Below are positions 1 through 59,105 of a DNA stretch of 64,000 bases, one piece after another (positions within the stretch are counted from its first letter, which is position 1; every line of letters begins with the position of its first letter). The stretch covers positions 43,598,113-43,662,112 of the forward strand of contig NC_068993.1 of NCBI RefSeq assembly GCF_001194135.2. The letters run 5' to 3'. The notes under the pieces were generated by a model. It did not search any database, was not told the origin of the DNA, and was given only the letters and a program-made list of their open reading frames with translations. A program made the translations under genes and the position numbers. Source of the DNA: Octopus bimaculoides (taxonomy: Eukaryota).

Positions 1-48
1 CAATCGGAACCTCTGCAATTGCTGTTTATGCCTCAGATGCAGATACGG
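1..48 (+). CDS. FAT4: Fat4 window-exon 1 (partial; cadherin repeat ...IGTSAIAVYASDADT-G)
   Basis: Frame from base 3 encodes the cadherin A-x-D-x-D motif; donor G|GTAAGT at 49; phase 1 matches the acceptor at 12881. Confidence 0.9.
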
Positions 49-7467: not shown

Positions 7468-7702
7468 NNNNNNNNNNNNNNNNNNNNNNNNNNNNNNNNN
7501 NNNNNNNNNNNNNNNNNNNNNNNNNNNNNNNNNNNNNNNNNNNNNNNNNNNNNNNNNNNNNNNNNNNNNNNNNNNNNNNNNNNNNNNNNNNNNNNNNNNN
7601 NNNNNNNNNNNNNNNNNNNNNNNNNNNNNNNNNNNNNNNNNNNNNNNNNNNNNNNNNNNNNNNNNNNNNNNNNNNNNNNNNNNNNNNNNNNNNNNNNNNN
7701 NN
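7468..7702. other. Assembly gap (other gaps: 34160-34185, 45981-45990, about 52280-52575, 58830-58839)
   Basis: N runs, mostly abutting microsatellites. The exon chain closes without needing sequence from any gap. Confidence 0.99.
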
Positions 7703-8300
7703 CACCTTAATATTTCCGAAACTACCATCTTCCAAAAGCAGGAAACGCCAATATTATATTACATAATATTTTGTAATTGGTACACAAGTAGCTTATAAGG
7801 ATTCAGTATTTTTTTAGGTGTCATAGTTTTCATATTGCAAACATTATGAACAGCAAATTGCTGAGAAAATTTCTGATAACCTTCCTTCCTTCCTTCCTCT
7901 CCTCTATTTCATTGGTCAGTAGCCACCTTGTTGCTTAAATCAGCCAGCATCTTCAGTATATACTTCACCTTCAAAAAATTCATTCTCGATGCACACTGAT
8001 AAAACAATAATTACAAAACAAACAGAATTGTTTTTAGCCGATTGCCTATTCATATTTTGATATACAGTAGTTTGCAAGATGATATGTCGTTTACAGACAA
8101 TCTAATAGCTCATACAAAAAGAGAATCAATTCTTTTTTTCTTTTTGTTATTGTTTTTTTCTTCTACTAAAAGAATAATTTGAAAAGAAGTTTTGACAAAT
8201 ATTATCTAATGGTATATTACGTCTGGAAGGTCATTACTATGTCTTGTAACCCTTCTTTTTATATTGAAAGAAATATTGTAAGTATGATTATCATTATTAA

Positions 8301-8511
8301 GGCAGCGAGCTGGCAGAATCGTTAGCACACTGGACAAAATGCTTGGCGGTATTTTGCCCATTGCTACATTCTGAGTTCAAATTGTGCCAAGATCAGCTTT
8401 GCTTTTCATCCTTTCGGGGTCACTAAATTAAGTACCAACTGCATACTGAGATCAATTTAATCAACTGGCTCCCACCCCAAAATTTCAGGCCTTGTGCTTA
8501 TAGTAGAAAGG

Positions 8512-8568
<57 letters not shown>

Positions 8569-9474
8569 AAGGTGGCAAGCTGGCAGAATCGTTAGCACAC
8601 TGGACAAAATGCTGAGGTCAAAATTCTGCCGAGGTCAACTTTGTCTTTCATCCTTTCGGGGTTGATAAATTAAGTACCAGTTGCATACTGGAGTCAGTGT
8701 AATTGACTAGTCCCCTCCCCACAAATTTGAGGCCTTGTGCCTCCAGTAGAAAGGATTGTTATTATTATTGTGATGATGATGATCATTATTATCATCATTA
8801 AGGTGGCATGCTAGAAGAATCATTAGCACTCTGAACAACATGCTAAGTAGCATTTCTTTTGGTTCTTTACATTCCGAGTTCAAATGCCACTGAGGTTAAC
8901 TTTGCTTTTCATTATTTCGGGGTTGATAAAATAAGTGCCAATTGAACACTGAGGTCAGTGTAATCGACTCATCCCCTCCCTGAAATTGCTGACCTTGTGT
9001 CAAAATCTGAAATTATTATTCATTGCAGAATCATTGGCACACCAGGCAAAATGCTTAGCACCATTTTGTCCATCTTTATGAAATTCCACTGAGGTCAACT
9101 TTGCTTTCCATCCTTTTGGAGTTGATGAAATAAGTATCAGTTAAGCATTGGGAGCAGTGTAATCAACTCACCTCTTCCCCTAAAATTGCAGGCTTTGTGC
9201 CTATACTAGAAAGGATTATTATTATCATTATTATTAATATTATTATTATTATTATTATACAAGGTGGTGAGCTGGCAGAATCGTTAGCACGCCAGGCGAA
9301 ATGCTTTGCGGTGTTTCGTCTGCCTTCGTGTTCTGAGTTCAAATTCCACCGAGGTTGACTTTGCCTTTCATCCTTTCAGGGTCAACAAATTGAGTACCTG
9401 TGAAACACTGGGGTTGATATAATTGACTAGTCTCCTCCCCCAAAAATTCAGGCCTTGTGCCTTTAGTAGAAAAG
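8301..9474 (+). mobile_element. Head-to-tail array of five copies of an approximately 210-bp tRNA-like SINE with (ATT)n tails
   Basis: Repeated head GGC/GGTGGCGAGCTGGCAGAATCGTTAGC, B-box-like GAGTTCAAAT and tail AGAAAGGATT(ATT)n; copies start at about 8301, 8571, 8802, 9024 and 9263. Confidence 0.88.
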
Positions 9475-9498
9475 ATTGTTATTATTATTATTATTATT

Positions 9499-9780
9499 GT
9501 TCAGTAATTTTATTTTTATAACGTGCTTTCACTTCACTACCGAGCGCAGCTCTGTGCGCCTTGGGTATGTGCTGTGGTTTGCTGTGGTGCTCTTATGTTT
9601 ACTGTATTGAAAGTGTTTTGCGTAGAATGTGTGCAGTACCCAGTAGTGCAATTTTCTGTATGTTATATATATTTGTAAGTCCTGGTGTTTTTGTTATGTA
9701 TTTGTCTGAATATTTTTTTTATTATACCTAAGGCACCTACTATGATAGGAATTGTTTCTGTTTTTAGATTCCACATTCGA
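9499..9780 (-). mobile_element. 5'-truncated 3' end of an R4/Dong-like LINE flanked on both sides by (ATT)n
   Basis: Encodes TETIPIIVGALGIIKKYSDKY...ILRKTLSIQ-type tail plus 3' UTR; about 6 mismatches to the copy at 15122. Confidence 0.85.
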
Positions 9781-12598: not shown

Positions 12599-12712
12599 CT
12601 GGATTTGGCCAGATTGAACATATAAACAGGTAGAATATTTTGACTGGATGTGGCCAGTTTGAATATATAAAACAGGTAGACTATTTTGACTGGATGTAGC
12701 CAGTTTAAATGT
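12599..12712 (+). repeat. 45-46 bp minisatellite, about 2.5 copies
   Basis: CTGGAT(G/T)TGGCCAG...ACAGGTAGA..ATTTTGA units start at 12599, 12644 and 12690. Confidence 0.85.
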
Positions 12713-12880
12713 TAAAGGTTTTAATATAATTTTTCTCATTGCATAGATTATGAAAATGTTGATGTCTGTTTTGGTGGGGTTACCAATTGAGTCATGTGAC
12801 TTCAATTAAAACTATGTATTATTCGTTTTTGGTAAATTTGAATTAACGATTACCATTTCTTTTATTCTTCTCTATTTTAG

Positions 12881-13071
12881 GAATCAATAGTAAATTGATC
12901 TACAAAATCACAGGTGGGAACCAGGATGCTCATTTTATTATTGATCCCCAGACTGGTATAATTTCTGTAAACCATACTTTGGACCGTGAACAATATCCAT
13001 CTTATTCTTTGACTATTACTGCCATGGATACAGTATTCCCTGTTTGGCAGCGCCACTCTGCCCTTGCCCAG
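12881..13071 (+). CDS. FAT4: Fat4 window-exon 2 (G-INSKLIYKITGGNQDAHF...LDREQYPSYSLTITAMD...ALAQ)
   Basis: Pyrimidine tract and TTTTAG acceptor; LDRE motif; donor CAG|GTTAGT; 191 nt, phase 1 to 0. Confidence 0.95.
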
Positions 13072-13399
13072 GTTAGTGTGATTTTTATTCTTCATTTGTA
13101 TGAAAAAAAATGTGATATGTAATATGAATATATTTGATTCATTCTTTTAATTCTCTTTGGCTCGTTTTAGTCGTTGAACTTTGGCTTTACTGGGACACTG
13201 CCTTTAGGGGTTTAGTTGTGGTACTTATTTTATCAGTCCCCAATTTTTTTGCTGAACTGCTAATTTGTGGATACATAAACAAACCAATACTGTTTGTCAA
13301 GTGGTGAGATACCAACACGCACACTCTCCCATGCACACGCACATCAACCATCAATCAGGTCCCCTCTCTGAATTCAAGGCTCAACTTGCCAAATTTTTT

Positions 13400-13600
13400 A
13401 AGTTCCTTATGTGTTGTACTGCATATATACAATAAGCCCTTGCTTCCAATCCATTCTCTGATGTCAGTTCACAAACATCTTTGCTGTCTCTACCCTCCAC
13501 ACTTCCTATCAAGATGGTCTTAGGCAATGATTCATGGTGTATTAAAAGCCCAAAATATGATAGCTTTGTAGACTTGATTCTCTTTGGACATTCAGCTTCA
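13400..13600 (-). mobile_element. Decayed RTE-clade LINE 3' remnant
   Basis: Minus strand reads KLSYFG...KTILIGSVEGR, resembling the RTE C-terminal L-x-YFGH...KTIL-x-G-x-VEG motif. Confidence 0.5.
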
Positions 13601-14408
13601 TATACATATATGGCAGTTACAAGGAATACGGAGATGAATACATCTGCATAATTTTTTTATTTAAATTTAATTTAGTTAAATATGCAGATATATTAATCTC
13701 CATATTCATTGTAACTGCCTTGGATGTACACTTGGTAAACTATTTATGATCCAGTGAAGCAAACCCATCATTTATCTATCGGATGAAATCCATTGGGATT
13801 GCTTGCCTCAAATAATCCTAGGTGCTGCTTACCACTCAATGCAGTTAGCCATAACTTTGATTATAATTGAGTGCTTGAACGGTACCCGCCTGGATATATT
13901 ATACCTATCTCTGTGTGTGTGTGTGTGCACCACAGGCTTCTTCATAGTTTTTGTTTATTGAATCCACTTACAAGTCATTGCAGTTGCCCTCAAGTCAAAA
14001 TAGAATCTACTAGCATCATGCACCATTCAGTGAGATTGAACTTGAAGCCATATGGTTGTGAAGCAAACTATTTAACTATACAGCCATGTCTACAACTCTG
14101 ATCACACTGAGTAAATCCGAAAGTATTTGGTATTTAAAAGTTTTCATTGATTAGCTAGAAATTAAAACCTCTCTCTCTCTCTCTCTCTCTCTCTCATCTA
14201 ATCTAAGAAAAGTATAAAGTATGAATTTATACCAATTCTTAAATCTTCTGCAAAATGGAACTTGTTGTTTACTTCCTTCATTTCATTCACCATGCCAGAC
14301 TTGATGCTTTCTGAAAAATAACACGGGAATTTCTAAATCAAAAGAAAATAAGATTTAATGGTAGACTATTCCTAAGATTCTGTATTTTATCACCCAACCA
14401 TTGCCCTG

Positions 14409-14691
14409 GTGACTTCAATACATTCCATATTACAAGAATATTAATATGAAGATTACCATTATATTTTCTCCAATAATAAAATTGATAAACAAAACAACAG
14501 CTGGAAAGCAAAGATCTTATTTTTGATTGATTTTTTTCGAACTAAGATGATTCCTACAAATCAACCATTCTTAAGAACATGACCAATATCCATCTTATTC
14601 CTTAACTATTACTGCAATAAATACACTAATCCCTGTTACTGCAATAGATACTCTAATCCTTATATTATTGCAATCGATCAGCTAATCCTTA
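14409..14691 (+). pseudogene. Decayed duplicate (pseudo-exon) of Fat4 exon 2 with its upstream intron flank
   Basis: 14584-14637 matches 12991-13044 at 47/54 nt. The upstream part aligns to the exon start with frameshifts. Flank words GTGACTTCAAT and GATTACCATT are shared with 12796-12857. The acceptor AG is lost. Confidence 0.85.
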
Positions 14692-15121
14692 TTTGATGTT
14701 ACCAAACTGACCTTATTTTTTTTTAACGGGTGTTGAAATTCTACAGTCTACAGAAAATTGGTTTTATTCAAGACATTGGTAAAGTAAATCATCAATAGAT
14801 TGTTATTATCATCACTATTATTATTGTATGAAGGTGCATAGCCTAGTGGTTAGAATGTTGCAGTCATAATTGCAAACTTACAGTTTCAGTTCCTAGACCA
14901 GGTGGTGCATTGTGTTTCTCGAGCAAAATACTTCATCTGATGGTACACCGTGCACTTGTTCAGGCAACATTGATTTGATGGAGAAAGAGAGCTAATGTAC
15001 AGCACATGCATTTGATCACTGTAAACAAATCATTTGTACAGGTTGTTCAGCAAAAAAGCTGAACACTCACACACCATCTTTGACAGGAGAGTCCTTCACT
15101 ATTATTATTATTGTTATTATT

Positions 15122-15515
15122 GTTCAGTAGTTTTATTTTTATAACGTGCTTTCACTTCACTACCGAGCGCAGCTCTGTGCGCCTTGGGTATGTGCTGTGG
15201 TTTGCTGTGATGCTCTTATGGTTACTGTATTGAAAGTGTTTTGCGTAGGATGTGTGCAGTGCCCAGTAGTGCAATTTTCTGTATGCTATATATATTTGTA
15301 AGTCCTGGTGTTTTTGTTATGTATTTGTCTGAATATTTTTTTATTATACCTAAGGCACCTACTATGATAGGAATTGTTTCTGTTTTTAGATTCCACATTC
15401 GAGTTACCTCTATTTCCAGGTCTTTGTATTTTGAAAGTTTCTCCATTTTTTTTAGGGAAACGTTGCCATCTGCTGGTATTGATACATCAATTAGAAAGCA
15501 TTTTTTTCCTTCATG
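15122..15515 (-). mobile_element. 3' end of an R4/Dong-like LINE with intact RLE C-terminal frame
   Basis: ORF 15222-15530(-): KCFLIDVSIP...KLSKYKDLEIEVTRMW...IPIIVGALG...QKIALLGTAHILRK, a PD-(D/E)xK RLE domain; (AAT)n tail. Confidence 0.88.
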
Positions 15516-15579
15516 TACAGTACATTTCACTTCTCAGAGCTCTCAATTTCACTTGCTCCAACTAATTTTGTAGGAACAG

Positions 15580-15840
15580 ACAGCAATCTGTTGTTGTCAA
15601 GAGTATCACAGTGTCTTCTTCCATGATACTTAACATCCAAGTACCAATCTCAAAATCCTTGTTGTCCCCAATACAGCAGTTTTCTGAGCATCTTCTACCC
15701 TCATGCCAATCGCAATTTCTCCAACAAAATTCTCAAACCTGATTGTTAATGCTCCCAGTACCCTTACAACTATTGAATGACAGTTATTTTCTTCATTGCC
15801 AGCATTCATGCAATCTCTTCTTCTTGTGGCTTGTACTTCT
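15580..15840 (-). mobile_element. 3' fragment of a second, diverged R4/Dong-like family
   Basis: IVVRVLGALT...FENFV...RVEDAQKTAVLGTTRILRLVL is homologous to the RLE tail; bounded by (ATT)n at about 15841-15863. Confidence 0.7.
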
Positions 15841-15984
15841 ATTATTATCATTATTATTATTATTTTGGTCTGGCTCAGGTTCGGTGTTATTCCAATAGGA
15901 ATTATGTGGTTAGTGGGTTACTACTTGTAGCGTTAGGTATCCACAAGTTTTCAGCATTCTTCTTCTTATTATTATTATTATTAT

Positions 15985-16240
15985 TGAGTGAGAGAGCAGT
16001 GCATGCCATCAAAGTAACACTGGGGTAAAATATACGAAGCCCAATATACCCATCATGACTACCCGTCTGATAAGGGTACACCAGGCACATGCATCACAAC
16101 CATATGTGCACAACATGGTGATCTCATATCAAGATAAACAATGCATGACCTCACAGGTGGGGGCCCAGTTAGAATTTTCTTCAGGTCGAGTAGCCCATCC
16201 CACTCAAAAGGTCCCTGAATAAGGTTTGTTTCCAAAGGTG
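15985..16240 (-). mobile_element. Non-coding retroposon (probable 3' UTR or non-autonomous partner of a Dong-like LINE) with (AAT)n tail
   Basis: GC-richer block between (ATT)n tracts; the minus strand ends CTCTCTCACTC-(AAT)n, the same polarity as the Dong-like copies. Confidence 0.45.
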
Positions 16241-16298
16241 AATTATTCAAAATTATTATTATTGATAATAATAATAATAATAATGATGATGATGATAT

Positions 16299-16750
16299 AA
16301 GGTGGCGAACTGGCAGAATTGTTAGCATGCAGGGCAAAAATGCTTAGCGGCATTTTGTCTGTCTTTATGTTCTAAGTTCAAATTCTGTCAAGGCTGACTT
16401 GGCCTTTCATGCTTAAAGGTTCGATTAAATAACTACCGGTTGAACACATTGATGTCAATATAATTGACATGCTTTTCCTCTCAAATTACTGGCCTTGTGC
16501 CAAAATTTGAAAGAATTATTATTATTTCTGTTTAGGCAGTGAGCTAACAGAATCATTATCATGCCGGGCTGAATGCTTAATGACATTTCATCTGTCTTTA
16601 CATTCTGAGTTCAAAATCTGCCATGGTCGACATCACCTTTCATTCTTTCGGCGTTGGTGAAAGAAGTACAAGTTACACACTGGGCTCAATGTAATCAATT
16701 AGCCTCCTCCCCCAAAATTTCAAGGCTTGTGCCTGTAGTAGAAAGGATTA
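16299..16750 (+). mobile_element. Two tandem ATT-tailed SINE copies
   Basis: Heads at about 16299 and 16533; ATT spacers. Confidence 0.8.
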
Positions 16751-17204
16751 TTACTATATATTCCTAGATTTAGAGTTATGTTCTATGTAGTCATTGTTTT
16801 TAAAACTGAATCAATTATTTAGTTCATTTTTACATCCATTTTTCTATGCCAGCATGAGTTAGACATTGTATATTATTTAGGTATTGTGTAACAGCCAGAT
16901 GCCCTTCCTGGCACTATCCCTTACTTTTTAAGTAATGGATCTCTTCTTTCACATGAAGCAAGTGGATTATTTGTTAACAGAAGAAATGACAGTTATGTCA
17001 CTGCTTGTTGTTCAGAAATTTTTGGAGTAACACAAATATAAACAAACAAATGGACACACATACACAATGCACTCTCACACACATGCACATATACATGATG
17101 CTCCTTTCAGTTTCCTTCTGTGAAATCAACTCACAAGACTTCAGTTGGTCCAGCATTATAGTAGAATATACTTGCACAAAGAGCCATGCAAAACCACTTG
17201 GTAG

Positions 17205-17430
17205 GCACATGGCTTAGTATTTCGGGTGTTGGACTCATGATCATAAGATTGTGGTTTTGATTCCTGGACTGGACGATGTGTGGTGCTCTTGAGCAAAACT
17301 TCATTTCACGCTGTTCCAGTCCACTCAGCTGGCAAAAATGAGTAATCCTGTGATGGACCGGTGTCCCACCCAGGTGGGGAATATATATGCCAAGGAAACC
17401 GGGAAACCAACCCTTATGAGTCAGCATGAC
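17205..17430 (+). mobile_element. tRNA-head SINE with CORE/Meta-like middle (TTGAGCAAAAC...CACTCAGCTG...AATGAGT)
   Basis: A-box-like TGGCTTAGT and B-box-like GGTTTTGATTCC; related copies at about 21970-22310, 22635-22800, 29755-29930 and 63290-63490(-). Confidence 0.7.
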
Positions 17431-17591
17431 TTGAGAAGGTAACTTTACTTTATGTGATAGGGAAATAAACTCTCTAACCACACAGCCATACCTGCACCTA
17501 CATTTAGGGACCAAGTAAATAATTTTACCACATTGTTTCAGTTTCGGACCCTTAATAATATCCCTTGGTTTCTATTTTTTGCCTATTTCAG

Positions 17592-18052
17592 GTGACAATT
17601 ATAGTATCTGATGTAAATGACTGTGCCCCAAGATTTACGTCGCCAACTGAAATATGGGTGGAAGAAAACGCTCCAATTAATACTATTGTGTACAACATTA
17701 AAGCAATAGACGATGATGATGATGGGCCCAATCAGAACATCAAATACTCCATCACTGCTTCTACTGGTCCATTCTCTATTAGACCAGATGACGGAAGCTT
17801 AAGATTGATGTCATCTTTGGACAGAGAGTCTCGAGATACTTACTATTTGACTATCAAGGCAACAGATGGAGGGACACCCATGTTATCGTCCACAATTGAC
17901 ATTGTTGTCCATGTAAAAGACGAAAATGATAACAATCCAGTGTTCTTCCCAAAGCAATATCAAGCAAACATAAGTGAAAGCAAGCCTGTTGGTACTATTT
18001 TATTGCGGGTCACCGCTACAGATCTTGACATAGGTCTGAATGGTATGGTTCG
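17592..18052 (+). CDS. FAT4: Fat4 window-exon 3 (VTIIVSDVNDCAPRF...DENDNNPVF...GLNGMV-R)
   Basis: TTTCAG acceptor; two DxND-type linkers and LDRE; donor CG|GTGAGT; 461 nt, phase 0 to 2. Confidence 0.96.
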
Positions 18053-19487
18053 GTGAGTATTGCTTAAATTTTACTGTTTCTTAGCTTTATTTTTTAAATT
18101 AGAAAGTATCATCTTCATCATTACCATTTTCTTTTAATGTCCATCTTTCCTGCTGACATAATTTTGAAGGTTTGACATTATTTTAGTGCTTTGACAGGAT
18201 TTATGACTGCATCCAGTTCCAGTGTCTGCTTTGGCTTGGTTTCTACAGCTGGATGTTCTTCCTAACACTGAAGTATAGTGGGTGCATTTTTCCACTTTAC
18301 AAAGTGTAGTGGTTGCTTTTTTTTTTTTCATGGAGCCATCAATAGTGAGGTTACCATGCAGCTCATGTGACTCAGATCCCCTTCAATTGAATGGGGTTTC
18401 AATTAAGTTTTATGCTAGGGGATGAGAAGTTAAAGTAATTCATTTATTTTAGCTTTGTTGAATAAGCAAATGTCATAATTTGTCTATCTCTCATTGTTGC
18501 TCAATGTAGGGTGAGGGCCTTACTGGCCACTGCTATTAAGTTGACCAACAGGCCATATGAGATGTGATATTTTGGAGTCTTCCACATCCTAACAGAGGAC
18601 AAAGATCCTTCCAACTACATTGATATTATTGGCAGAAACACACATGAAATTCAGGATGTTTCAAAGCCAAAAGGGGACAGAGATATCAGGTGCAGCATTG
18701 TGAAACATATCTCAGTTGCTACACGTGGAGAAGAAAAAGAAGTCTATGTGTCTGTGTAACTTATGAACAGAGATGCACACATTATACATGTACCTTATAA
18801 TTATGTGTGGTTGTGGGATTCAGGTAGTGCAGTACTGATCACATGGTCACCAGTTCAACTCTTATTAATATAGCCATTGTGTTGTGTGCATCAATGAACA
18901 GAGCATGTAATTATTCTTGCTCTAATTTAGCTGATTGATATGAAACGACTTTCAACCTTTACTTTATGGTTGAGTAATTAGCAGTCAAAAAGTATCCAGA
19001 ACCTGTTCTTATGGAAACCATCTCATTTGTATCAGTTTTTTCCCATACAGTGTAGATCCAGGAGGACTCTTTAATCTTATCTTTTTAATGGTAGCACCAT
19101 GGTTCTAGATGGCGATGAATAAGCAAAAGCAACCTAGGATCCAGAGGACACTTTTGTCTTGTTTTGTTGAAGACAATGCAACTTTTGTAGTGGTACTGCC
19201 ATGATAAAAGTGACCTAGTATATTCTGGTGATGACTAAGCAGACACCGTGTATTGTTAAGAGAACACTGTTGCCTTGTCTTGAGGATATGACGGCTGTCT
19301 AGTGGTAGATCCATAGTAGACGGCACCTTCTACATTCTGTAAAGTGCTTTATGAATGAGGAAAGACACCATAGTCCAAAGACCCCTTTTGCCTTTCCTGA
19401 CGGACATGGCCAGCATGGAAGACTAACATTGAAGGATGATGATGTTAACTCTTTGAATTAGGAAAAACATCAATCCATAGAAGCCAT

Positions 19488-25127: not shown

Positions 25128-25382
25128 GACTAAAGGATTTATTTATTGATGAAAGAAGAAACATTAAATAATAATAATCCTTCCTACTAAAGGTACAAGG
25201 CTTGAAATTTTAGGATAGGGGACTAGTAGATGACATCGACCCCAGTGTTTCACTGGTACTTAATTTATCGACCCTGAAAGGAATAAAAGGCAAAGTCAAG
25301 CTTGGTGAATAATAAAAGCATTGCGTTATTTCAGACTAAAGGATTTATTTATTGATGAAAGAAGAAACATTAAATAATAATA
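25128..25382 (+). repeat. Perfect 49-bp direct repeat bracketing a SINE fragment
   Basis: GACTAAAGGATTTATTTATTGATGAAAGAAGAAACATTAAATAATAATA at 25128-25176 and 25334-25382. Confidence 0.9.
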
Positions 25383-26225
25383 TTAATATTAATAATCCTT
25401 TGTACTATGAAGCAAAAAACAAAAGGTTTGAAATTTTGGTGTAGGCGGTAAGTTAATTATATTGGCCCCCAAGAATCAAGTGGTACTTGATTTAGCAACT
25501 TTGAAAGGATGAAAAGCAAAGTCGACCTCGGCAGAATTTGAAGTCAAAATGTAAAGACTGGCAAAATTCCACTAAGTATTTTGCCCAGCATGCTAACAAT
25601 TCTGCCAGCTTTTCTCAATAATAATACTAATAATAATGATAATAATAATAATAATGGTTTCAAATTTTGGCACAAGGCTAACAATTTTAGAAGGATGGGC
25701 TAAGTCGATTACATCGACCCCAGTGCTCAACTGGTAGTTATTTTATCAACCCCAAAAGGATGGAAGGCAATTTTGAGGAGTGAAGGTTAGCTGCTACCAT
25801 TGATCTCCAGTATTTGACTGGTACTGACCCCAGAAGGATGAAAAGTCAAGCTGACATCAGTAACATTTGAACACAGAATGTAAATAGCTTGAAAAAATGC
25901 CACATTTTGTCCAACTCCTTAATGATTTTGCCATCTTATTACCATAATAATAATGATTTTAGCAAAAGGCCAGTAGTTTTTAGAAGTGGAGAAGGTCAGT
26001 TACATTAATCTCCCCTTAATCCCATCCAGTACTTGACTGGCAGTTTTTTTTATCAACCTTGAAAGTTGACCTCAATGACATTTGAACCCTGGAAGTTGAC
26101 TTCAGTGACATTTGAACCTTGAACGTTAATCTCAGTGACATTTGAACCTGCAACATAAAACCAGAAGGAATGTCACTAAGCATTTTATCTGATGTGCTAA
26201 CAATTCTGGTTGCTTGCTGTCTTGA
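25177..26225 (-). mobile_element. Array of about five ATT-tailed SINE copies or fragments on the minus strand
   Basis: Reverse complement of the same family, separated by (AAT)n; one copy carries a 3 x 30 bp internal tandem at 26061-26150. Confidence 0.78.
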
Positions 26226-31992: not shown

Positions 31993-32349
31993 TTGAATAA
32001 GATGGATCTTGAACATTTGCATATTATTTTTAGAACAAGATACTCTTTATTATCATTATTATTATTCATACTGAGGTTACACCTGTAAAAAAAAAGGGTA
32101 ATATAAAAGGAGAAGGGGCTGTATACCCCTCCTGATCAGGCTCCCATGGCTTTTATGGGTTTTTCCACATGTAACCTTTCGAAGCGCCTCCCCCTATTGG
32201 GAGTTTTATTTGTTATATCTTTCTCTGTTTTTCATTGTTTACACGAACGTTTTCTTTTCGGACAAAACCTTTTGTAACCTTCGTCCTGTCTTTGTCCTTA
32301 CATGGTTTTAATTTATATTAACCCTTGTGGCCAATAAAACAAGAATCAG

Positions 32350-32573
32350 TTATTATTATTATGGTTTCAAATTTTGGCACAAGGCCACCAATTTCAGAAG
32401 CAGAGTAAGTTGATTTCATCAACCTCAATATTCTACTGGTAGCTATTTTATTGTCCCCAAAAGGATGAAAAGCAAAGTCAACCTCAGTAGAATTTAAACT
32501 CAGAACATAAAGACGTACAAGATGCCGCTAAGCATTTTGCCCAGCATACTAACGATTCTACTAGCTCACTACC

Positions 32574-32620
<47 letters not shown>

Positions 32621-32840
32621 GTTTCACATTTTGACACAGGGCTAGCAATTTTAGCAGGCGAGGTTTAGTCAATTACATCAACTTCAGTACTCAGCTAGTA
32701 CCTATTTTCTCAACCCCTGCAAAGGGATGAAAGGCAAAGTTGGCTATGTCAGGATTTGAACTCAGAATGCAATGAACTAGAGGAAATGTTGCTAAGCATT
32801 TTGTCCAGCACAAAATTCTGCCAGCTCGCCACCTTAATAA
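32350..32840 (-). mobile_element. Two tandem ATT-tailed SINE copies on the minus strand
   Basis: Reverse-complement heads end at about 32575 and 32835; (AAT)n spacer at 32575-32618. Confidence 0.8.
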
Positions 32841-33160
32841 TTACAAATACAATAATGATGATAATAATAATAATAATAATAATCTAGGTTTTGAAAAAAT
32901 AGTGAAATCTATTTTCTACCAGATTAGTACAAGCAGAGTTACGCACCTTGTTGAAGATTGCAGCTAAATAAAGTCTGATCATATTATCAGTATGACAATA
33001 TCTTAAACTTTCTAACCATTTTCTCTCTTGTCTGTCATTCACATCTATCTATAATAATAATTATATATGATCGTGGCTGTGTCATTAAGATGTTTGCTTC
33101 TGAATCATATGGCTTCAGGTTCAATTCCACTGCATGATACCTTCAAGGTGGTTGCTCGGC

Positions 33161-33491: not shown

Positions 33492-34185
33492 TATGTGTAT
33501 ATAATACACACACAGACACACACACACTAGGATACCCATATATGAATGGTTCTTTAAATGAACTAATTGAATAACAAATGTCTTTTCTAAAGAAAATTAA
33601 ACTCATAACAATCTGAAATTTGAATAACAAACCAAGTAGACAATTCATGCATATAAGTGACTGGGAGAGTGTGTACAGACAGTTTGTTTAATGTTCATGT
33701 ACACATTTCATGCAGCTTGCAAATTTTCGTAGTTTATATAGAAAAATATTAATATTTCTTATATTTTTTGGATGAACAGAAGCAAAACAAAAAGATACAC
33801 ACATACATATTTATGGATGGGCCAATAAAACATTATTTCATGCTTTTATTTGGAGTCTGGGTGTGGCTTGGAACAGATTAACTCTATTTATATGTTTATA
33901 TGTTTTTCAATTTATCATGTGAGTTACAATTTGGTTAATGAACAAGGCTCTGGAACAGATTATGTTCATATACAGAAATCCCACTGTGTGTGTGTGTGTG
34001 TGTGATAAGAAGCTTGCTTTCCAACTGCATGATTCTGGGTTCAGTCCCACTGTGTGGCACCTTTGGCAAGTGCCTTCTACAAAGCCCTGTGAGTGAATCT
34101 GGTAGACAGAAACTGAAAGAAGCCCATCGTATACATACATACATACATACATACATACANNNNNNNNNNNNNNNNNNNNNNNNNN

Positions 34186-39765: not shown

Positions 39766-39986
39766 CCCTTTTAAAATGATTGATGTAAATATACGCCAAA
39801 TGTTATCTCACACTGGGTACTGACCTCAGTTGGCGCAATTACCATTGTTATGTGCAGGCAACCAAATGAACCACCACGGTAAATTGATTAAAATGGTTGA
39901 TGTAAATATATGCCAAACCGTTGTCATGTGTTAATTGCTGATCTCAGCCAAAATGATTACCATCAATACAACCTAGTTGCTTGGGG
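39766..39986. mobile_element. Second piggyBac-type MITE family, 221 bp
   Basis: TTAA-CCCTTT...GGGG-TTAA; internal direct repeat AAAATG(A/G)TTGATGTAAATATA(C/T)GCCAAA. Confidence 0.65.
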
Positions 39987-40076
39987 TTAAATCGCATCTA
40001 ACATAATTACATCTTTACATCATATTTTAAAAGTAGATCTTATTTAATTAATTTCATTCATATGTTATCTTTATAG

Positions 40077-41441
40077 GTTCTGTGCATCTTTCTGCAAGTC
40101 TGAGTCAAAGTATGGATAAAGAGTTTCAGCTAAAAGTGCAGGCAGTCGATAAAGGACGTCCACCACAGTCGTCAGACATAGCAACCATACACTTGAAAGT
40201 AACAGACATCAACAAATATTCTCCTTTATTCTTGAGAATTGTTTTTGAGAAACAAATTCCAGAGAACTTTACAGTAAACGGCATTTTTGATACAGTTCAA
40301 GCTATAGATCATGATCACGGACCAAACCAAGAAGTCAGTTATTATATAACCGGTGGTGACCCTCAGAATTTGTTTGCAATTAATGAAAAATATGGAAATC
40401 TCTCGGTGAATAAACCTCTCGATTATGATACAACAACTGTGCATCGACTGAATATTACTGCAAGAGACCACGGCTTATATTACAAAGAAACTTCCATCAT
40501 ATTTACCATCTTTGTCACTGATGTTAATGATAACCCTCCACTCTTTGATCAAGATGTTTATGATGTTTATATCCGGGAAAATTCTCCCATTGGTGCATCA
40601 GTCTTCAAACTATCAGCCACTGATGCAGATTCTGGTAGCTATGCCATCATTGAATATCAAATTGTTGGAGATAACCTAGCCCAATCTAAGTTCATGATTG
40701 ACCATAAAGCTAAAACTATAAACTCAACTTCGTCCCTTGACTATGAATCTAAAGAAAACTATTCACTTCATATTCTTGCTAAGAACCCTGGAACCAATTT
40801 GCAAAGTGTTGCTGTTGTTAATGTCCATCTCGTTAGTGTCAACGAATACAACCCAATATTCATACAAAATGAATATAATTTCAGTATCAGTGAGTCAGTT
40901 CAAAAGGGGACATCTGTTGGTGCTGTCCTTGCTACGGATAGAGATGCAGGACCAGATGGAATAGTCTATTACTTTTTGATGGATTCGAGTAATTTAAAAG
41001 GCTTCAAAATAAACCCTCTCTCCGGGGTTATCACAGTGTCTGGGAAACCTGACTATGAGTCCCAATCTCATATTACTTTGGATGTTATGGCTAAAAACTG
41101 GGGAAGTGTAAAAGGTAACGATACTGTTCAGTGCAAAGTACATATTACTATAACTGATGCTAATGATGCACCTGTATTTCTTTATCCACTTTATACTAAA
41201 GACCTTAGGGAGGACATTCAGCCTGGCACACTTGTAATTAAGGTAAAAGCTTTTGACAATGATCTACATCGCAAAGATCACCAATTCAATTACACAATTC
41301 TATCAGGAAATCTCCATAATGCCTTCCATATTAATTCAACATCAGGCCAAATCTCCGTTTCATCCAAACTTGATCGTGAATCAGTGGCTTTGTACCAGCT
41401 AAAAGTAGGTGCCATTGATAAAGGGATACCACCTCAGACAG
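40077..41441 (+). CDS. FAT4: Fat4 window-exon 11 (about 4 cadherin repeats; G-SVHLSAS...AIDKGIPPQT-G)
   Basis: TTATAG acceptor; LDYD, LDYE, PDYE and LDRE motifs; donor G|GTAACT; 1,365 nt, phase 1 to 1. Confidence 0.96.
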
Positions 41442-41613
41442 GTAACTACTTTTCAAATTTATTTTCTATTTAAATCTTGTAGTTTGTTATATGTATACCA
41501 TCTTTTGAAATATTTTATATCAATGAAGAGAATAGTAGTTTTAAAATTTTGTACTAAAATTTCGAATTCTTTTTATCAGTTTATTTACATTGATAATTTT
41601 ATTTCTCTTGTAG

Positions 41614-43352
41614 GAACAACAACTATAAAGATTCACATTCTTGATGTGAATGACTGCTCCCCAACTTTCTCTAACGGTTCATTGGCAGCTTTTGTCAAAG
41701 AGAATGCAGCCATTGGAACTAGTGTGATATCATTAGCAGATTTCACTGAAGATTGTGACCTCCCGCCAAACACTAACCCTTACTACTTCTTTCAAGATAA
41801 TAAAAATTCTAACTCATATGTTAAAATATCCAAAGCAGGTTTGGTTACAACAAACACAGCTTTAGATCGTGAAAAAATTTCCAGATTCTCTGTGAGTGTC
41901 ACTGTGACAGATAGTGGTAAACCAACAATGACGTCAAGTTTGTCTTTTACTGTTCTAGTACAAGATGTCAATGACAGTCCTTCGAGGCAAAGGAAACTCA
42001 ATATTCAGTTAAGTTTATTCCAAAAACAGTCACCAACTCAATTTGTTGGGGATGTGAAGCCTTTAGACAATGATATAACTGGAGATTATTCGTGTCGTAT
42101 TCTTCAAATGAGTGCCGAGATCTTCAAAATTACTGAACACTGTTACTTAGAAGTTCTCCAAGAACCTGTATCTAGTGACCATTGGCTTACTATCAGTGGG
42201 CATGATGGTATTCACTCAGAAGTTGTCTACAATATTACAGTTAATTTTGCTTTTCTCACTAATGAAACATTAAAGGATTCTTTGACTGTGAAGTTAGTAA
42301 ACGTGACTGAAAAAAGGTTTCTTACAAAACTCTATTCCAAGTTTTTGAAGAATTTAAATAATAATCTGGAATCTGATTGGGAGAGTAAAATCTTTAGTAT
42401 TAAGCAAACTGGTAACGATCTTGATGTTTTTATAATGACTTTAGACAGAAATGGAAAACCCATCTCAAAACAGTTGCTGCAAGAAATGATTGCAGCAAAC
42501 AAAAATGAATTACAGCAGGGTTTAGCAACCAATATAATTTTGGGTCATTCGCTGTGTGCAGTTAACCCTTGCTACAATGGTGGTTCGTGTATTGATCAAT
42601 TAGTCGTCAGTAGTAACTGGAATATTATAGCTACCAACAGACAAATTATGAGTGGACCAAATATAACTGACTTTATCTGCAAATGTTCTGTGGGTTATAC
42701 AGGAACACTTTGTCAGATCCAAGAAACCCAATGTGGAGATGTTTATTGTCACAATGGTGGAGCATGTGTTATCTCATCCTATAGTAAATCTTACTGCCAG
42801 TGTTTGTCCGGCTGGACTGGTCTAACTTGTACTAAAGATATCAATGAATGCAAACAAAATCCTTGCCAACATGGTACTTGTGAAAATACAGATGGTTCTT
42901 TCAAGTGTGTCTGCCAGAAAGGATTCTTAGGAATATATTGTGAGACAGGAATTAATTACTGTCAACCTAACCCATGTCAGAATGAAGGTGTCTGTAAAAA
43001 TAACCGTGACGGATTTATCTGCCAATGTCCTTACAATAAATGGGGTCAATCTTGTTCAAAGTCATCTTACAGGTTTGAAGAATTATCGTTTCTGGAATTT
43101 CCAACTATCGCCGAGAATTACAACAATATTACCGTACACCTTGCTACAAAAATGTCTAATGCGCTACTACTTTACAATCCAGTCAATCCCTCCCTCAGTC
43201 AAACAGTAGAGAGTTTCATAGCTTTGGAAATTATCAATGGACAGGTTCGACTGTCTATCTCTACTGGAAGTGCGTCTGTTCTCAATCTCTATATTCCATA
43301 TACAATTAACGATGGCAATTGGTATAAAGTAGAAGTGTTGAGAATTCGCAGA
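41614..43352 (+). CDS. FAT4: Fat4 window-exon 12 (last cadherin repeats, membrane-proximal region, four EGF repeats, first part of LamG1)
   Basis: TTGTAG acceptor; DVNDCSPTF and DVNDSP linkers; EGF patterns including Ca-binding DINECKQNPCQHGTC; LamG WYKVEV; donor AGA|GTAAGT; 1,739 nt, phase 1 to 0. Confidence 0.97.
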
Positions 43353-44282
43353 GTAAGTTATTTTCATTTTATTCCATTTATCTCTCTGTTACAATATTTT
43401 AATTAAAATGTCTTTAATCATTTTATCACCATTATTTCAATATCCACTTTACATATTTGCATGGAGTAGACAGAGTTTATTGAAATAGATTTTCTACATC
43501 CAGATACCCTCTTTGTCATCAGCTCTTACCTACATGTTCCAAGTTCGGTAATATTTTCACATGGCCAAACATGTTGTTGCAGAATATTGGAAATGAATGA
43601 TGCTGCTTGTATGACAGTGACTCTCACTTACAGCTAGCATGTAATGACAAGACAAGCACATACACTTCTCTTTTTATGCCACATCACACATGAACATCGA
43701 CTCCAACTCGAGACCACAGTGTGTCTTTCATCCAAGTTTCCATGGTCGTGATCTGGGACCATCTGCACAGTTCGCCAGCCCATGTACAGGATGCTTTTAC
43801 AAGACACCATTCATGTGTATATATTTCTATAATCAATTTAAAAAGAAAACTAAATATGAATATGATGTAAATGTTGTTAAATTCTAATTCTTTTGCTTCA
43901 CAACCACATAGTTTTGGGTTCAATCACAATGTATAGCATCTTGGGCAAGTGGAATTTGTTGGGCCACTGCATTGTGAACACTTTGCAGGATGAATAAGGC
44001 CTGTCAAAGGACAGATGAGCTCATCCACATGAATGGTGTCTTGTAAAAGGATCTATTTTTTAGCCTTTTCTTTTTGGTTTCGGCTGTAACCATGTCTTTG
44101 TGTGTATAGGTCAACAAGACATATCTAGTCTCCCATGCTCTCTATGAGACTATTCACTTTCTGAATCATGCACATTATCACCATCATCATACATTTTGAC
44201 AATTCTATTTTATTGATGAACTGAGATTCCTTAGCAAGCATCATTGCAAAACAGCTTGGGTAGCTGAAATCCAAAACAGCTA

Positions 44283-45980: not shown

Positions 45981-45990
45981 NNNNNNNNNN

Positions 45991-46340: not shown

Positions 46341-46645
46341 GAATTTACAACTTCATGGTGGTAATCTATACATTGGTGGAATTCCTGCACAATATGTAAT
46401 TCGAAGCAATCAAGTTCAATCACATGATTTTATTGGATGTATGCGCAGTTTTATTGTGAATGGGGTGGATATGATTCAGCTTGAACCACGAAGATCTACT
46501 GGAATAAAGAAGGAATGTCTACGAGAAAATATTGCTGGACCTTGTAAAAGTAACCCCTGTAAAAATGGTGGGATTTGTCTTGATAAATGGACTACATTTA
46601 AGTGCCAATGTTCTCCAGAATACATGGGCAAAATGTGTGAAGAGA
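46341..46645 (+). CDS. FAT4: Fat4 window-exon 14 (end of LamG1 LYIGG...DFIGCM, then EGF CKSNPCKNGGIC...MCEE)
   Basis: TTACAG acceptor; donor A|GTAAGT; 305 nt, phase 2 to 1. Confidence 0.95.
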
Positions 46646-50209: not shown

Positions 50210-50950
50210 GTGGTCTGATCAATAAGTATCTGAACTGTTGCTATGGTAAAGAAGCTAAAGCATGCAAAGTGAAGCTGCTTGGCACAGATTGACCTTGAAC
50301 TCTGCTGTGCATGTACACTAAGTTCTAACATTCTAGCTCACATCTGCTGTTTACAGCAGTGCTTGGAAGGAAGGTGTGTAGCGTGTGATCATCGCATTGA
50401 CCACAACAGAGAAAGTTGTTGTGTCGATACCTGCTCAGAGGCTTACGCAAAGTTGCAGAAAGTGTATGGAGAGGAGTGTATGAACTGCAAACAAGTGTAC
50501 GAGTGGTTCAGACGTTTCCAAGATGACTGAAAAAATGTCAATATTGGGCGAATGTTCTGGGAGACCTGCAATCAGCAGAACTGAGAAAAACATCATCGAT
50601 GTGCATGCAGCTGTGAGGAGAAATCGTCGAATCACCATCTGTGAGTTATAAGAGGACGTGCAGATTAGTTATGGTTCAGTTCAGTCCATTATCACTGAAG
50701 ATTTGGGTATGAGACGTGTGTCTGCTCAGCTTGTGCCCAAACTGTTTTCAGCTGACCAAAAAGACACTCGGGTTTTCTTTTGCACAGAATCTCCTTGATT
50801 GTTTTGAGAACGATGAAAACTTTTTGAAAACTTTGCGTAGGCATCTGAGCGGGTATCGCGAAGTTTTTGGCAAAATTTGATGCAGATTCTCTGCTCAACT
50901 TTCTCTGTCATGTTCAATGTGATGCTCACACGCTACACACCTTCCTTCCA
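50209..50950 (+). mobile_element. Mariner transposase relic with inverted duplication of its 5' part (fold-back)
   Basis: Left TIR TGTGGTCTGATCAATAAG after TA. Frameshifted HTH region DTCSEAYAKLQKVYG...VYEWFRRF...RRITI...LGMRRVSAQLVPK. 50829-50950 is the reverse complement of 50364-50455 (MTEKVEQRICIKFCQKL). Confidence 0.88.
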
Positions 50951-51630: not shown

Positions 51631-51842
51631 AATGGAAACCATTTTCATTTGGACCTGGAGCACGTGTTGAATTTAGTAGACGAGAGACTTACTATCGCGA
51701 CGAGTTTCTAAAATCAAATTCAAGATTCCGTCAAAAGCGTAGTGTTCTAAAGGCTAATACAATTACTATCAAATTCCGTATTTTAAAGAAATCTGGACTC
51801 TTATGGTATGCAGATAATAAGAAAAAGTTCATCCTTCTGATG
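51631..51842 (+). CDS. FAT4: Fat4 window-exon 15, missing from ORF track (K-WKPFSFGPGARVEF...RFRQKRSV...IKFRILKKSGLLWYAD...FILLM), start of LamG2
   Basis: Poly-T and CAG acceptor; LamG signature I-K-F-R...G-L-L; donor ATG|GTAAAT; 212 nt, phase 1 to 0. Confidence 0.92.
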
Positions 51843-52272: not shown

Positions 52273-53002
52273 CTCTAATNNNNNNNNNNNNNNNNNNNNN
52301 NNNNNNNNNNNNNNNNNNNNNNNNNNNNNNNNNNNNNNNNNNNNNNNNNNNNNNNNNNNNNNNNNNNNNNNNNNNNNNNNNNNNNNNNNNNNNNNNNNNN
52401 NNNNNNNNNNNNNNNNNNNNNNNNNNNNNNNNNNNNNNNNNNNNNNNNNNNNNNNNNNNNNNNNNNNNNNNNNNNNNNNNNNNNNNNNNNNNNNNNNNNN
52501 NNNNNNNNNNNNNNNNNNNNNNNNNNNNNNNNNNNNNNNNNNNNNNNNNNNNNNNNNNNNNNNNNNNNNNNNNNNTATACCATCATTATTTAATGTCCAC
52601 TTTTCCATGTCTTCGTGGGTCAGGCAGAATTTGTTGGGGTAGATTTTCTAGGGCCAAATGCTCTTCCGGTCACCAACCTTCATCTTTTTCCAAGTTGGGT
52701 ACTATTTCCCCATGACCAGACATTGTGTTCATGGAAGATTGGAAAGGAAGGACACCACTTGCATGACAGTGGCATTCATTTAAAACTGTCACACAATGTC
52801 AAGAAAAGGAGACAGAAACACAACCACACACTTACACAATGGGCTTCTTTCAGTTCCATCTGCCAGATCCACGCATGAGGCTCTGGGCTATAAGACATTT
52901 GCCCAAGTGGGCTATAAGTAAAAGACATTTGTCCAAGTGTCATGCTGTGAGACTAAACCTGAAGTCACAAGGTTGAGAAGCAAACTTCTTAACCACACAG
53001 CC

Positions 53003-53278: not shown

Positions 53279-53459
53279 GTATGACACCTTGAATTTCTAA
53301 ACATATCTACGTTTTGTTTTTTCATTTTTTGGTTTTTACCTTTTACCAATTCAACTGAATATTCAGAATTTGTATACATTACAAAAAAAAAAAGAAAAAT
53401 ATTTTAGGTATTCCAATATGAAAAGTATCACATTCTTATTTTATCTTTTTATTCCACAG

Positions 53460-53603
53460 GGGACAGTGTAACAGTTGAAGGGGAAAATGAGAAGACCCAG
53501 GTATTCATCTCCAACCCATTAGACATTTCTTCTGTGGATGTTGAAGTGATGTTTTTGGCCAACACAAAACATTCTTTATCAATTCACAAGGAAACTATAC
53601 CAG
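53460..53603 (+). CDS. FAT4: Fat4 window-exon 17, missing from ORF track (G-DSVTVEGENEKTQ...DVEVMFLAN...ETIP-G), LamG2
   Basis: TTCCACAG acceptor; open frame; donor G|GTAAAG; 144 nt, phase 1 to 1; joins GFEGC of the last exon. Confidence 0.88.
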
Positions 53604-54406
53604 GTAAAGGCTATAACTATAAAAAAATATTTAACAACAAAATAAAAAAATTCTCAAAAGAAATATTTATAAAATTATTTGTTAACATAGGATTGTGGTA
53701 GATTATTTAGCTGTACATTAGATAACCCACATCATTGTTTTAATGTCCATTTTTCCATACTTGCATGGGTCAAATGGAGTCTATTGAGCCAGATTTTCTA
53801 TGTCTGGATTTCTTTCCTGTCATCAACCCTCAACTGTTTCTAAGCAAGGTAATATTTCTCCACAACTAGAAATGTTCCATGAAATATTAAAAATGAATGA
53901 CACTGCTTATATGACAGTGATAATCGTTTACAACTATCAGACTGTCTATGCAAAGACACATACACACACGTATACATACACACGCACACACATATATATA
54001 TGTATGACAAACTTCTTTCAGTTTCTGTCTCCCAGAATGTCACACAGTGGGACTGAACTTGAAACCATGTGATTAGGAAGCAAACTTCTTAACCACAGAC
54101 CCATGCCTGCACCTATTATAATGCATTCTAACCTAGGAACTGGTAACAGTTGCCAACAGAAAGGGCATCCAGCCATAGAAAATCTTCCTCAATAAATTCC
54201 AACTGAACCATGCAAAGCATGGAAAGATGAACATTAAAGAATTATGATGAGGATGATAAGAATGTTTCTTGTACCAGATTTATAAATATCAATAAATGAC
54301 ATTTTGATTAACTTCTTCTCAAGTACTGAAATGTTTTAATGTTTATCCAATTAATTACATCAGATTTCACCCATGTTCATTGTACTTTTCTCTTTTTTAT
54401 TGTCAG

Positions 54407-58829: not shown

Positions 58830-58900
58830 NNNNNNNNNNTGAGTGTAATATAGCAAGCCAGTAAAGTTATGATCCCAAACTTGTAATATTTATTACACAA

Positions 58901-59105
58901 GGTGGCAAGTTAGCAGAATTGTTAGCATGCTGGGCAAAATGTTTAGCAGCATTTCATCTGTCTTTATGTTCTGAGTTCAAATTCTGCCGAGGTTGATTTA
59001 TCCTTTCAGGGTTGATAAAATAAGTACCAGTTGAGCACTGGGGTTGATATAATCAACTTTCCCCTTCTCCCCAAAACAGCTGGCCTTCTCCCAAAATTTG
59101 AAACC
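58901..59105 (+). mobile_element. ATT-tailed SINE copy downstream of Fat4
   Basis: Head GGTGGCAAGTTAGCAGAATTGTTAGC; tail CCAAAATTTGAAACCAAT. Confidence 0.8.

What the first reader, a model, noticed from the sequence alone, without database searches (positions are those of the whole stretch)
14409..14691. Fossil duplicate of a Fat4 cadherin exon hidden in the following intron
Seen: about 1.6 kb downstream of exon 2 there is a decayed copy of it. 14584-14637 matches 12991-13044 at 47/54 nt. The 5' part translates with two frameshifts as N-K-LI-K-T-G-Q--F-ID against NSKLIYKITGGNQDAHFIID. Intronic flank words (GTGACTTCAAT, GATTACCATT) were copied too, so this was a DNA-level tandem duplication and not a retrocopy. 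The acceptor AG is gone, and the 3' end has slipped into three 27-29 bp units (TTACTGCAATAGATACTCTAATCC-like, 14609-14691). Inference: this is a failed exon duplication in a giant cadherin, the raw material for mutually exclusive exons or repeat-number change. That is notable in a lineage known for protocadherin expansion.
Basis: partly seen in the sequence, partly recalled or inferred. Interest (0 to 1): 0.72.

Follow-up and report, generated by a model that had tools for sequence, protein, structure and literature searches.

The report
Decayed intronic copy of cadherin exon
An intron of a giant Fat-type cadherin gene, from an octopus-like mollusc, holds a broken non-coding copy of the exon just upstream; the copy is real, but this kind of duplication relic is common and well known.

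Summary
The exon at window 12881-13071 is 191 nt and encodes part of cadherin repeat ~19 of a Fat/FAT4-type cadherin. It has one same-strand, colinear, degenerate copy at 14471-14638 in the next intron. The two share 123/158 aligned bases with 7 indel events. The local alignment scores 98, against 22.9±2.7 (maximum 35) for dinucleotide shuffles. Nothing else in the 64 kb resembles either sequence.

The copy has stop codons in every frame. It has no AG where the acceptor should be and no detectable exon tail or donor. Its GC content has fallen to the intron level. Its 3' end is triplicated into units of 27, 27 and 29 bp.

Co-duplication of the upstream intron rests on only two colinear exact words, so support is moderate (p≈0.006).

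The best reading is an old local DNA duplication of one exon that became a pseudo-exon. The exon length is not a multiple of three, so splicing in both copies would shift the reading frame. I found no sign that the copy was ever under selection (pN/pS 0.68, p=0.48). Thousands of such intronic exon relics are already catalogued in other animals, so interest is low. I could not fetch the orthologous introns of other cephalopods.

The parts
1..48 (+). 3' end of the preceding coding exon (…IGTSAIAVYASDADT + first base of a Gly codon), followed by donor GTAAGT at 49
   Evidence: Translation. It joins in phase with 12881 to give ASDADTG|INSKL, as in Argonauta P0241 residues ~1973-1992.
12796..12880 (+). 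Intron flank upstream of the source exon, carrying the words GTGACTTCAAT (12796) and GATTACCATT (12848) and the acceptor AG (12879-12880)
12881..13071 (+). Source exon: 191 nt, phase 1 at its start and phase 0 at its end. It encodes G|INSKLIYKITGGNQDAHFIIDPQTGIISVNHTLDREQYPSYSLTITAMDTVFPVWQRHSALAQ, the middle of cadherin repeat ~19.
   Evidence: Pfam Cadherin E=9.4e-14. tblastn of P0241 residues 1987-2054 at 79%. Splice sites read.
14409..14470 (+). Probable copy of the upstream intron flank. It has the same two exact words in the same order, the spacing is shortened, and the acceptor region is deleted.
   Evidence: (p≈0.006)
14471..14638 (+). Pseudo-exon: degenerate copy of exon positions 12885-13045. 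123/158 aligned bases are identical, with 7 indel events, stops in all frames and 28% GC.
14606..14692 (+). Local triplication (27, 27 and 29 nt units) of the segment homologous to exon 13013-13041 (…TITAMDTVFP…). Unit 1 is colinear with the exon; units 2 and 3 are extra.
17592..18053 (+). Next coding exon (VTIIVSDVNDCAPRF…). It closes the 4.5-kb intron that holds the pseudo-exon.

Best explanation
A segment of at least ~250 bp was duplicated locally at the DNA level. It comprised ~85 bp of intron plus most or all of one 191-nt exon of a Fat/FAT4-type cadherin gene. The copy landed on the same strand in the intron just downstream. It was never, or not for long, used as an exon. It has since decayed neutrally into a pseudo-exon: it lost the acceptor AG, gained at least 7 indels and several stop codons, drifted to intronic AT content, and replication slippage triplicated a 27-nt piece of its 3' end.

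Shown: the homology, its uniqueness in the window, the orientation and colinearity, the loss of coding and splicing capacity, the triplication, and the identity of the source exon and the host gene.

Inferred: the duplication mechanism, the co-duplication of the intron flank, that the copy was non-functional from the start, and the timing. The copy-exon distance is several-fold larger than the ~9% intron divergence from a congeneric-level relative. Two shared states hint that the event postdates the split from the argonaut lineage.

Because 191 is not a multiple of 3, splicing both copies into one mRNA would shift the frame. The duplicate could therefore survive only if it was skipped or used in a mutually exclusive way. 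Skipping followed by decay is the simplest history.
For: - Alignment score 98, against shuffles at 22.9±2.7 (max 35) and a best of 35 elsewhere in the window. It is the only reciprocal blastn partner.
- The 3' block is 62/75 and 47/54. The 5' part has z=12.
- The copy's peptide matches EC19 of the full-length orthologue far better than any of the other repeats, 96 against 37.
- Two colinear exact intron words lie upstream, p≈0.006.
- There is no AG at the acceptor position, and stops occur in all frames.
- GC is 28% in the copy and 41% in the exon. pN/pS is 0.68, not different from 1 (p=0.48). Differences fall 4/2/7 by codon position.
- Three tandem units are present.
- The exon phase and length follow.
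- Both the exon's slower-evolving 3' half and the higher copy identity there fit 'one constrained partner, one free partner'. Against Argonauta the exon has 7 differences in its first 27 aa and 4 in its last 36.
- The copy keeps Ser and Ile where Argonauta has them but the window exon now has Thr and Phe. Some differences therefore arose on the exon side after the duplication.
- Intron identity to a related species is ~91%, against 17-28% divergence for the copy.
- Such relics are common: 4,027 unannotated intronic exon-homologous targets in human genes (PMC9013439).
Against: - The intron-flank evidence is modest. As a plain local alignment it is not significant.
- The exon's last 27 nt and its donor are not detectable in the copy. 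It cannot be said whether a whole exon or a truncated one was duplicated.
- The 1.34-kb spacer has no duplicate partner, so a strict tandem duplication is unproven.
- Only 64 kb of the genome could be searched for further copies.
- With 25 comparable codons, a past period of purifying selection cannot be excluded.
- No orthologous intron from another species could be examined.
Confidence: 0.85

Rival explanations
1. The copy is the remnant of a once-functional mutually exclusive alternative exon. This would have been an EC19 variant of the Fat cadherin that was used for some time and then lost in this lineage.
For: The 191-nt length (not a multiple of 3) is the kind of exon for which mutually exclusive use is enforced by the frame. 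In the best-conserved 11 codons (QYPSYSLTITA) all three differences are synonymous. Cadherin genes can carry such exon pairs: Drosophila N-cadherin has three (PMC2655722).
Against: Over the whole 25-codon block pN/pS is 0.68, with p=0.48 against neutrality, and the 'all synonymous' stretch was picked after the fact. There is no acceptor, no donor and no exon tail. The annotated Argonauta protein has a single copy of this segment. Two shared states of exon and copy against Argonauta and a chiton weakly suggest a lineage-restricted, later origin.
Confidence: 0.08
2. The exon-like segment was brought in by a mobile element or by non-local repair. Examples are exon capture by a transposon or a filler-DNA insertion. 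It would belong to a dispersed family, not to a local duplication.
For: The intron is full of dispersed repeats: 13137-13304, 14023-14097, 14816-15100, 15102-15402 and 16252-16762 all have other copies in the window. The spacer between exon and copy has no duplicated partner.
Against: The segment has no other copy in the 64 kb on either strand. It lies on the same strand, directly downstream of its source, with colinear intron words. No terminal inverted repeats bracket it; only AT-rich low-complexity pairs were found. There is no Rfam or Pfam signal in the intron.
Confidence: 0.05
3. The match is chance similarity in AT-rich intronic DNA, or a processed retrocopy of the mRNA.
For: The window is AT-rich, at 27-41% GC. 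The flank alignment alone is not significant.
Against: The score lies about 27 standard deviations (z≈27) above the shuffles, and none of ~550 real-sequence comparisons comes near it. A retrocopy would carry the neighbouring exons fused at its ends. Neither the preceding exon's end nor the next exon's start is present, and the upstream words are intronic.
Confidence: 0.01

Closest known systems
Unannotated intronic relics of tandem exon duplication (Letunic, Copley & Bork 2002, as cited in PMC9013439; the 2022 survey PMC9013439)
   Same: A sequence homologous to an annotated exon lies in the adjacent intron on the same strand and does not overlap a known repeat. It arose by local DNA duplication that can include intron flanks.
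   Different: This one is clearly dead: no splice sites, 7 indels and stops in all frames. It carries a secondary 27-nt triplication. It sits in a cephalopod Fat cadherin, for which I found no such report.
Mutually exclusive exon pairs of Drosophila N-cadherin (PMC2655722)
   Same: Duplication of an exon that encodes part of a cadherin repeat inside a large cadherin gene.
   Different: The N-cadherin pairs are intact, conserved across arthropods and spliced. Here one copy is a fossil, and alternative use has no support.
Dscam1-type exon arrays with competing RNA structures (PMC6071210)
   Same: Both originate from tandem exon duplication with adjacent intron.
   Different: No array, no intact variants and no docking or selector structure were sought or seen here. 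Only one degenerate copy exists.

Membership tests
Pseudo-exon derived from local (tandem-type) exon duplication | Statistically significant nucleotide similarity to a neighbouring exon of the same gene | tested here: met
   Score 98 against shuffles at 22.9±2.7 (max 35); 62/75 core block
Pseudo-exon derived from local (tandem-type) exon duplication | Same strand, colinear, located in an adjacent intron | tested here: met
   Copy at 14471-14638 lies inside intron 13072-17591, on the + strand, with an offset of ~1.6 kb
Pseudo-exon derived from local (tandem-type) exon duplication | Intron flank duplicated together with the exon (a DNA-level event, not an RNA-level one) | tested here: inconclusive
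   Two colinear exact words of 11 and 10 nt: 29/5000 shuffles and 11/1522 real blocks reach this. The local alignment of the flank is not significant, and the downstream flank is not detectable.
Pseudo-exon derived from local (tandem-type) exon duplication | Not a member of a dispersed repeat family | tested here: inconclusive
   No other copy in the 64-kb window. The whole genome and repeat libraries were not available.
Pseudo-exon derived from local (tandem-type) exon duplication | Loss of coding and splicing capacity | tested here: met
   Stops in all frames, 7 indel events, no acceptor AG, no donor homologue
Functional mutually exclusive exon pair | Both copies have an open frame, the same length and phase, and usable splice sites | tested here: not met
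Functional mutually exclusive exon pair | Purifying selection on the second copy | tested here: not met
   pN/pS 0.68, p=0.48; the block contains a stop codon. Power is low, with 25 codons.
Functional mutually exclusive exon pair | Transcript junctions into either copy | not testable with these tools
   No RNA-seq data were available.
Processed retrocopy | Adjacent exons fused without introns, a poly(A) tail, usually at a distant site | tested here: not met
   Only one exon is represented, and sequence of the neighbouring exons is absent at both ends
Fat / FAT4 (Drosophila Ft) type cadherin (host gene) | Long run of cadherin repeats (34 in Fat) in one giant protein | tested here: met
   At least 16 repeats in the window. 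The window's exons map to residues 1987-4951 of the 4951-aa Argonauta protein at 77-92% identity. The 5' half of the gene lies outside the window.
Fat / FAT4 (Drosophila Ft) type cadherin (host gene) | Membrane-proximal EGF-LamG-EGF-LamG-EGF module, then one transmembrane segment and a cytoplasmic tail | tested here: met
   Pfam EGF, Laminin_G_1 and Laminin_G_2 hits. Homologue mapping at 43074-43343, 46345-46641, 51639-51821, 53447-53605 and 54400-56094. The transmembrane segment is seen.
Fat / FAT4 (Drosophila Ft) type cadherin (host gene) | Orthology to named Fat/FAT4 proteins | tested here: met
   Sources' own names: 'cadherin-related tumor suppressor [Argonauta hians]', 'FAT4 [Acanthosepion pharaonis]', 'FAT-like protein [Mya arenaria]' and jgi 'protocadherin Fat 4'. 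No phylogeny was built.

The most novel reading that the evidence does not exclude
The fossil may record a period when octopod Fat carried two mutually exclusive versions of cadherin repeat 19. Some living cephalopod might still keep both intact, giving a giant planar-polarity cadherin alternative ectodomain isoforms.
Probability: 0.05. Interest if true: 0.45.

Novelty: new member of a known kind. Interest (0 to 1): 0.14.

Why it matters
It matters little beyond annotation. It is a clean example of how single-exon duplications arise and die inside a very large repeat-built gene. It also shows that an exon whose length is not a multiple of three cannot simply be added to the transcript.

It is useful as a caution for gene predictors and for homology-based exon finders in cephalopod genomes, which might call it a coding fragment. 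It could also serve as a neutral marker: its presence or absence in the orthologous intron of other octopods would date the event.

It would gain interest only if an intact partner were found in another species.

Tried and rejected
- A search of the 5.8-billion-protein collection with the 63-aa exon peptide found nothing. No short contigs carrying this exon from other species could be fetched.
- A scan of JGI metagenome contigs for the exon peptide gave 600 pattern matches, none confirmed.
- The full-length Argonauta gene was located, but its 263-kb range is too long for DNA to be returned.
- I tried to walk upstream along a 409,696-bp ENA contig of a more distant cephalopod (loci L002, L003). 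This reached only the equivalent of window ~30 kb.
- The related-species Logan contig L001 covers only window 39962-43532.
- TRF did not report the 27-nt units; the repeat finder did.
- Deleting units 2 and 3 to look for the exon tail and donor gave only a weak, non-significant extension.
- Inverted-repeat search around the copy found only AT-rich low-complexity pairs.
- Rfam over the whole window gave no match. Pfam on ORFs within the same intron gave no match.
- I considered that the host might be a type III classical cadherin, because of the catenin-binding-like tail. I rejected this because full-length orthologues are 4951-aa Fat proteins.
- Polarising the timing with a chiton outgroup is weak. 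The 'YSLTITA.D' motif recurs in other repeats.

Full report
**What is there.** The window is AT-rich eukaryotic DNA carrying the 3' ~54% of a very large cadherin gene on the + strand.

- Its acceptor AG is at 12879-12880 and its donor GT at 13072-13073.
- It starts in phase 1 and ends in phase 0.
- It joins the partial exon at 1-48 (…ASDADT|G) and the next exon at 17592 (VTIIVSDVNDCAPRF…). Together these form a canonical cadherin repeat.
- Pfam scores the 63-aa peptide as Cadherin, E=9.4e-14.
- A tblastn of a full-length relative places it at residues 1987-2054. Counting repeat-end motifs, that is cadherin repeat ~19.

**The observation.** A local alignment of 12700-13120 with 14300-14760 scores 98. 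A thousand dinucleotide-preserving shuffles give 22.9±2.7 with a maximum of 35. The best score against any other block of the window, on either strand, is also 35. A sensitive blastn of 12-17 kb against the whole window pairs 12970-13044 only with 14563-14637.
- The 5' two-thirds of the exon also aligns (z=12), but with many indels.
- Overall there are 123 matches, 35 mismatches and 11 gap columns in 7 events. 'Two frameshifts' understates the damage.
- No AG exists in the ~45 nt where the acceptor should be, and all three frames have stops.
- The three tandem units are real: 14606-14632, 14633-14659 and 14662-14688. TRF's scoring missed them.
- Units 2 and 3 keep exon-like bases that unit 1 has lost. 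The triplication is therefore itself old.

The two intronic words (GTGACTTCAAT at 12796/14409, GATTACCATT at 12848/14451) exist and are colinear with the exon match. As a free local alignment the flank is unremarkable (210/2000 shuffles reach it). As a chain of exact words it is reached by 29/5000 shuffles and 11/1522 real blocks. That supports co-duplication of the intron at about p=0.006, not decisively.

The exon's last 27 nt, the donor and the downstream intron have no detectable counterpart. The 1.34-kb spacer has no partner before the exon or after the copy. 'Tandem' in the strict sense is therefore not shown. This is expected if both partners of a neutral pair have diverged beyond recognition.

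**Which exon it copies.** Cadherin repeats resemble each other, so I compared the copy's conceptual peptide with all repeats of the 4951-aa Argonauta orthologue. The EC19 segment scores 96, against 37 for the next-best site. For the 5' part the scores are 35 and 22. The neighbouring exon is the source.

**The host gene.** Downstream of at least 16 cadherin repeats come EGF repeats, LamG, EGF, LamG, EGF, one transmembrane segment and a ~460-aa tail ending in EEYV.
- The closest proteins carrying a source's name are 'cadherin-related tumor suppressor [Argonauta hians]', 'FAT4 [Acanthosepion pharaonis]', 'cadherin-related tumor suppressor-like [Liolophura sinensis]', 'FAT-like protein [Mya arenaria]' and jgi 'protocadherin Fat 4'. 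The Argonauta protein sits in the 90% identity cluster of a hit that is 97% identical to the window's exon.
- The window maps to Argonauta residues 1987-4951 at 77-92% identity.
- The 'Fat4' label is therefore supported, and the organism is an octopod-like cephalopod other than Argonauta. The species itself was not determined.

**How it most likely arose and what it does now.** The simplest history is a local DNA duplication of ~250 bp or more, covering intron flank plus exon, into the downstream intron. Because 191 is not a multiple of 3, including both copies in an mRNA would shift the frame. The new copy had to be skipped or used exclusively.

Nothing indicates it was ever used.
- In the 25 comparable codons pN/pS is 0.68 (p=0.48 against neutrality), and one codon is a stop.
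- GC has fallen from 41% in the exon to 28% in the copy.
- The higher identity of the 3' block fits one constrained partner. Between the window and Argonauta the exon has 7 amino-acid differences in its first 27 residues and 4 in its last 36.
- At two sites the fossil keeps the residue that Argonauta has (Ser, Ile), while the living exon has changed (Thr, Phe).

**Timing (inference).** A genomic contig from a related species (Logan SRR11869391) is 93.1% identical to the window, and ~91% identical in introns. That is about 4-5% neutral change per lineage. The copy differs from the exon by 17% in the best block and ~22-27% overall, mostly on one lineage. The duplication is therefore several-fold older than that species split.

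Two states shared by exon and copy against Argonauta and a chiton (Ser13, Ile16 of the block) hint that it postdates the argonaut split. These Ser/Thr and Ile/Val positions also vary among repeats, so this is weak.

**Comparison with what is known.** Tandem exon duplication and its unannotated intronic relics are well documented. [quoted passage not shown] A 2022 re-survey found 4,027 intronic targets in human genes (PMC9013439). Cadherin genes can carry functional duplicated exon pairs, such as Drosophila N-cadherin (PMC2655722). A literature search for cephalopod Fat exon duplication found nothing specific. This is a new instance of a known kind.

**What could not be done.** The decisive comparison is the orthologous intron in other cephalopods, and it was out of reach.
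- The exon peptide has no entry in the protein collection.
- The metagenome scan was empty.
- The Argonauta gene range is too long for DNA retrieval.
- Contig walking on a distant cephalopod contig was cut short.
- Genome-wide copy number, repeat-library matches and RNA-seq were also unavailable.

**Verdict.** The 'decayed DNA-level duplicate of the adjacent Fat cadherin exon' reading is supported. The evolutionary significance attached to it is speculative, and the feature is ordinary.

Noticed in passing
window 55744-55998 (+), last exon: The Fat-type cytoplasmic tail ends with a stretch resembling the beta-catenin-binding region of classical cadherins (FDYDGLDSAGESYSTL…DLDYLLTWGPNFEKLVGVF). 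Pfam PF01049 scores 23.7 bits against a cut-off of 24. PDB 3ifq_C E-cadherin gives E=0.0025. The motif is conserved in the cuttlefish, bivalve and chiton homologues, all of which end in EEYV.
   Followed up: partly
window 15102-15402 and 9479-9780: A 302-nt segment is 97% identical between two neighbouring introns, so it is a young dispersed repeat. A minus-strand ORF at 15225-15533 overlaps it and has no Pfam match.
   Followed up: partly
window 16252-16762; also 8262-9489, 25165-25768, 32344-32880, 58899-59116: An abundant repeat family at 65-78% identity occurs in both orientations. It has an internal direct duplication (16314-16525 against 16548-16757) and trinucleotide-repeat ends.
   Followed up: no
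window 50273-50527 (+): An intronic ORF fragment carries a Mos1/mariner transposase HTH domain (Pfam HTH_48, E=1.6e-07). It is a mariner-like transposon remnant.
   Followed up: partly
window 7468-7702, 34160-34185, 45981-45990, 52280-52575, 58830-58839: Runs of N mark assembly gaps, mostly next to microsatellites. None is near the finding.
   Followed up: yes
window 53441-53605 and 54406; homologue P0121: In a more distant cephalopod relative (P0121, 66% identical), the LamG2 segment that is a separate exon here (53441-53605) is continuous with the last exon in one ORF. This suggests an intron difference between lineages, or that P0121 derives from a transcript.
   Followed up: no
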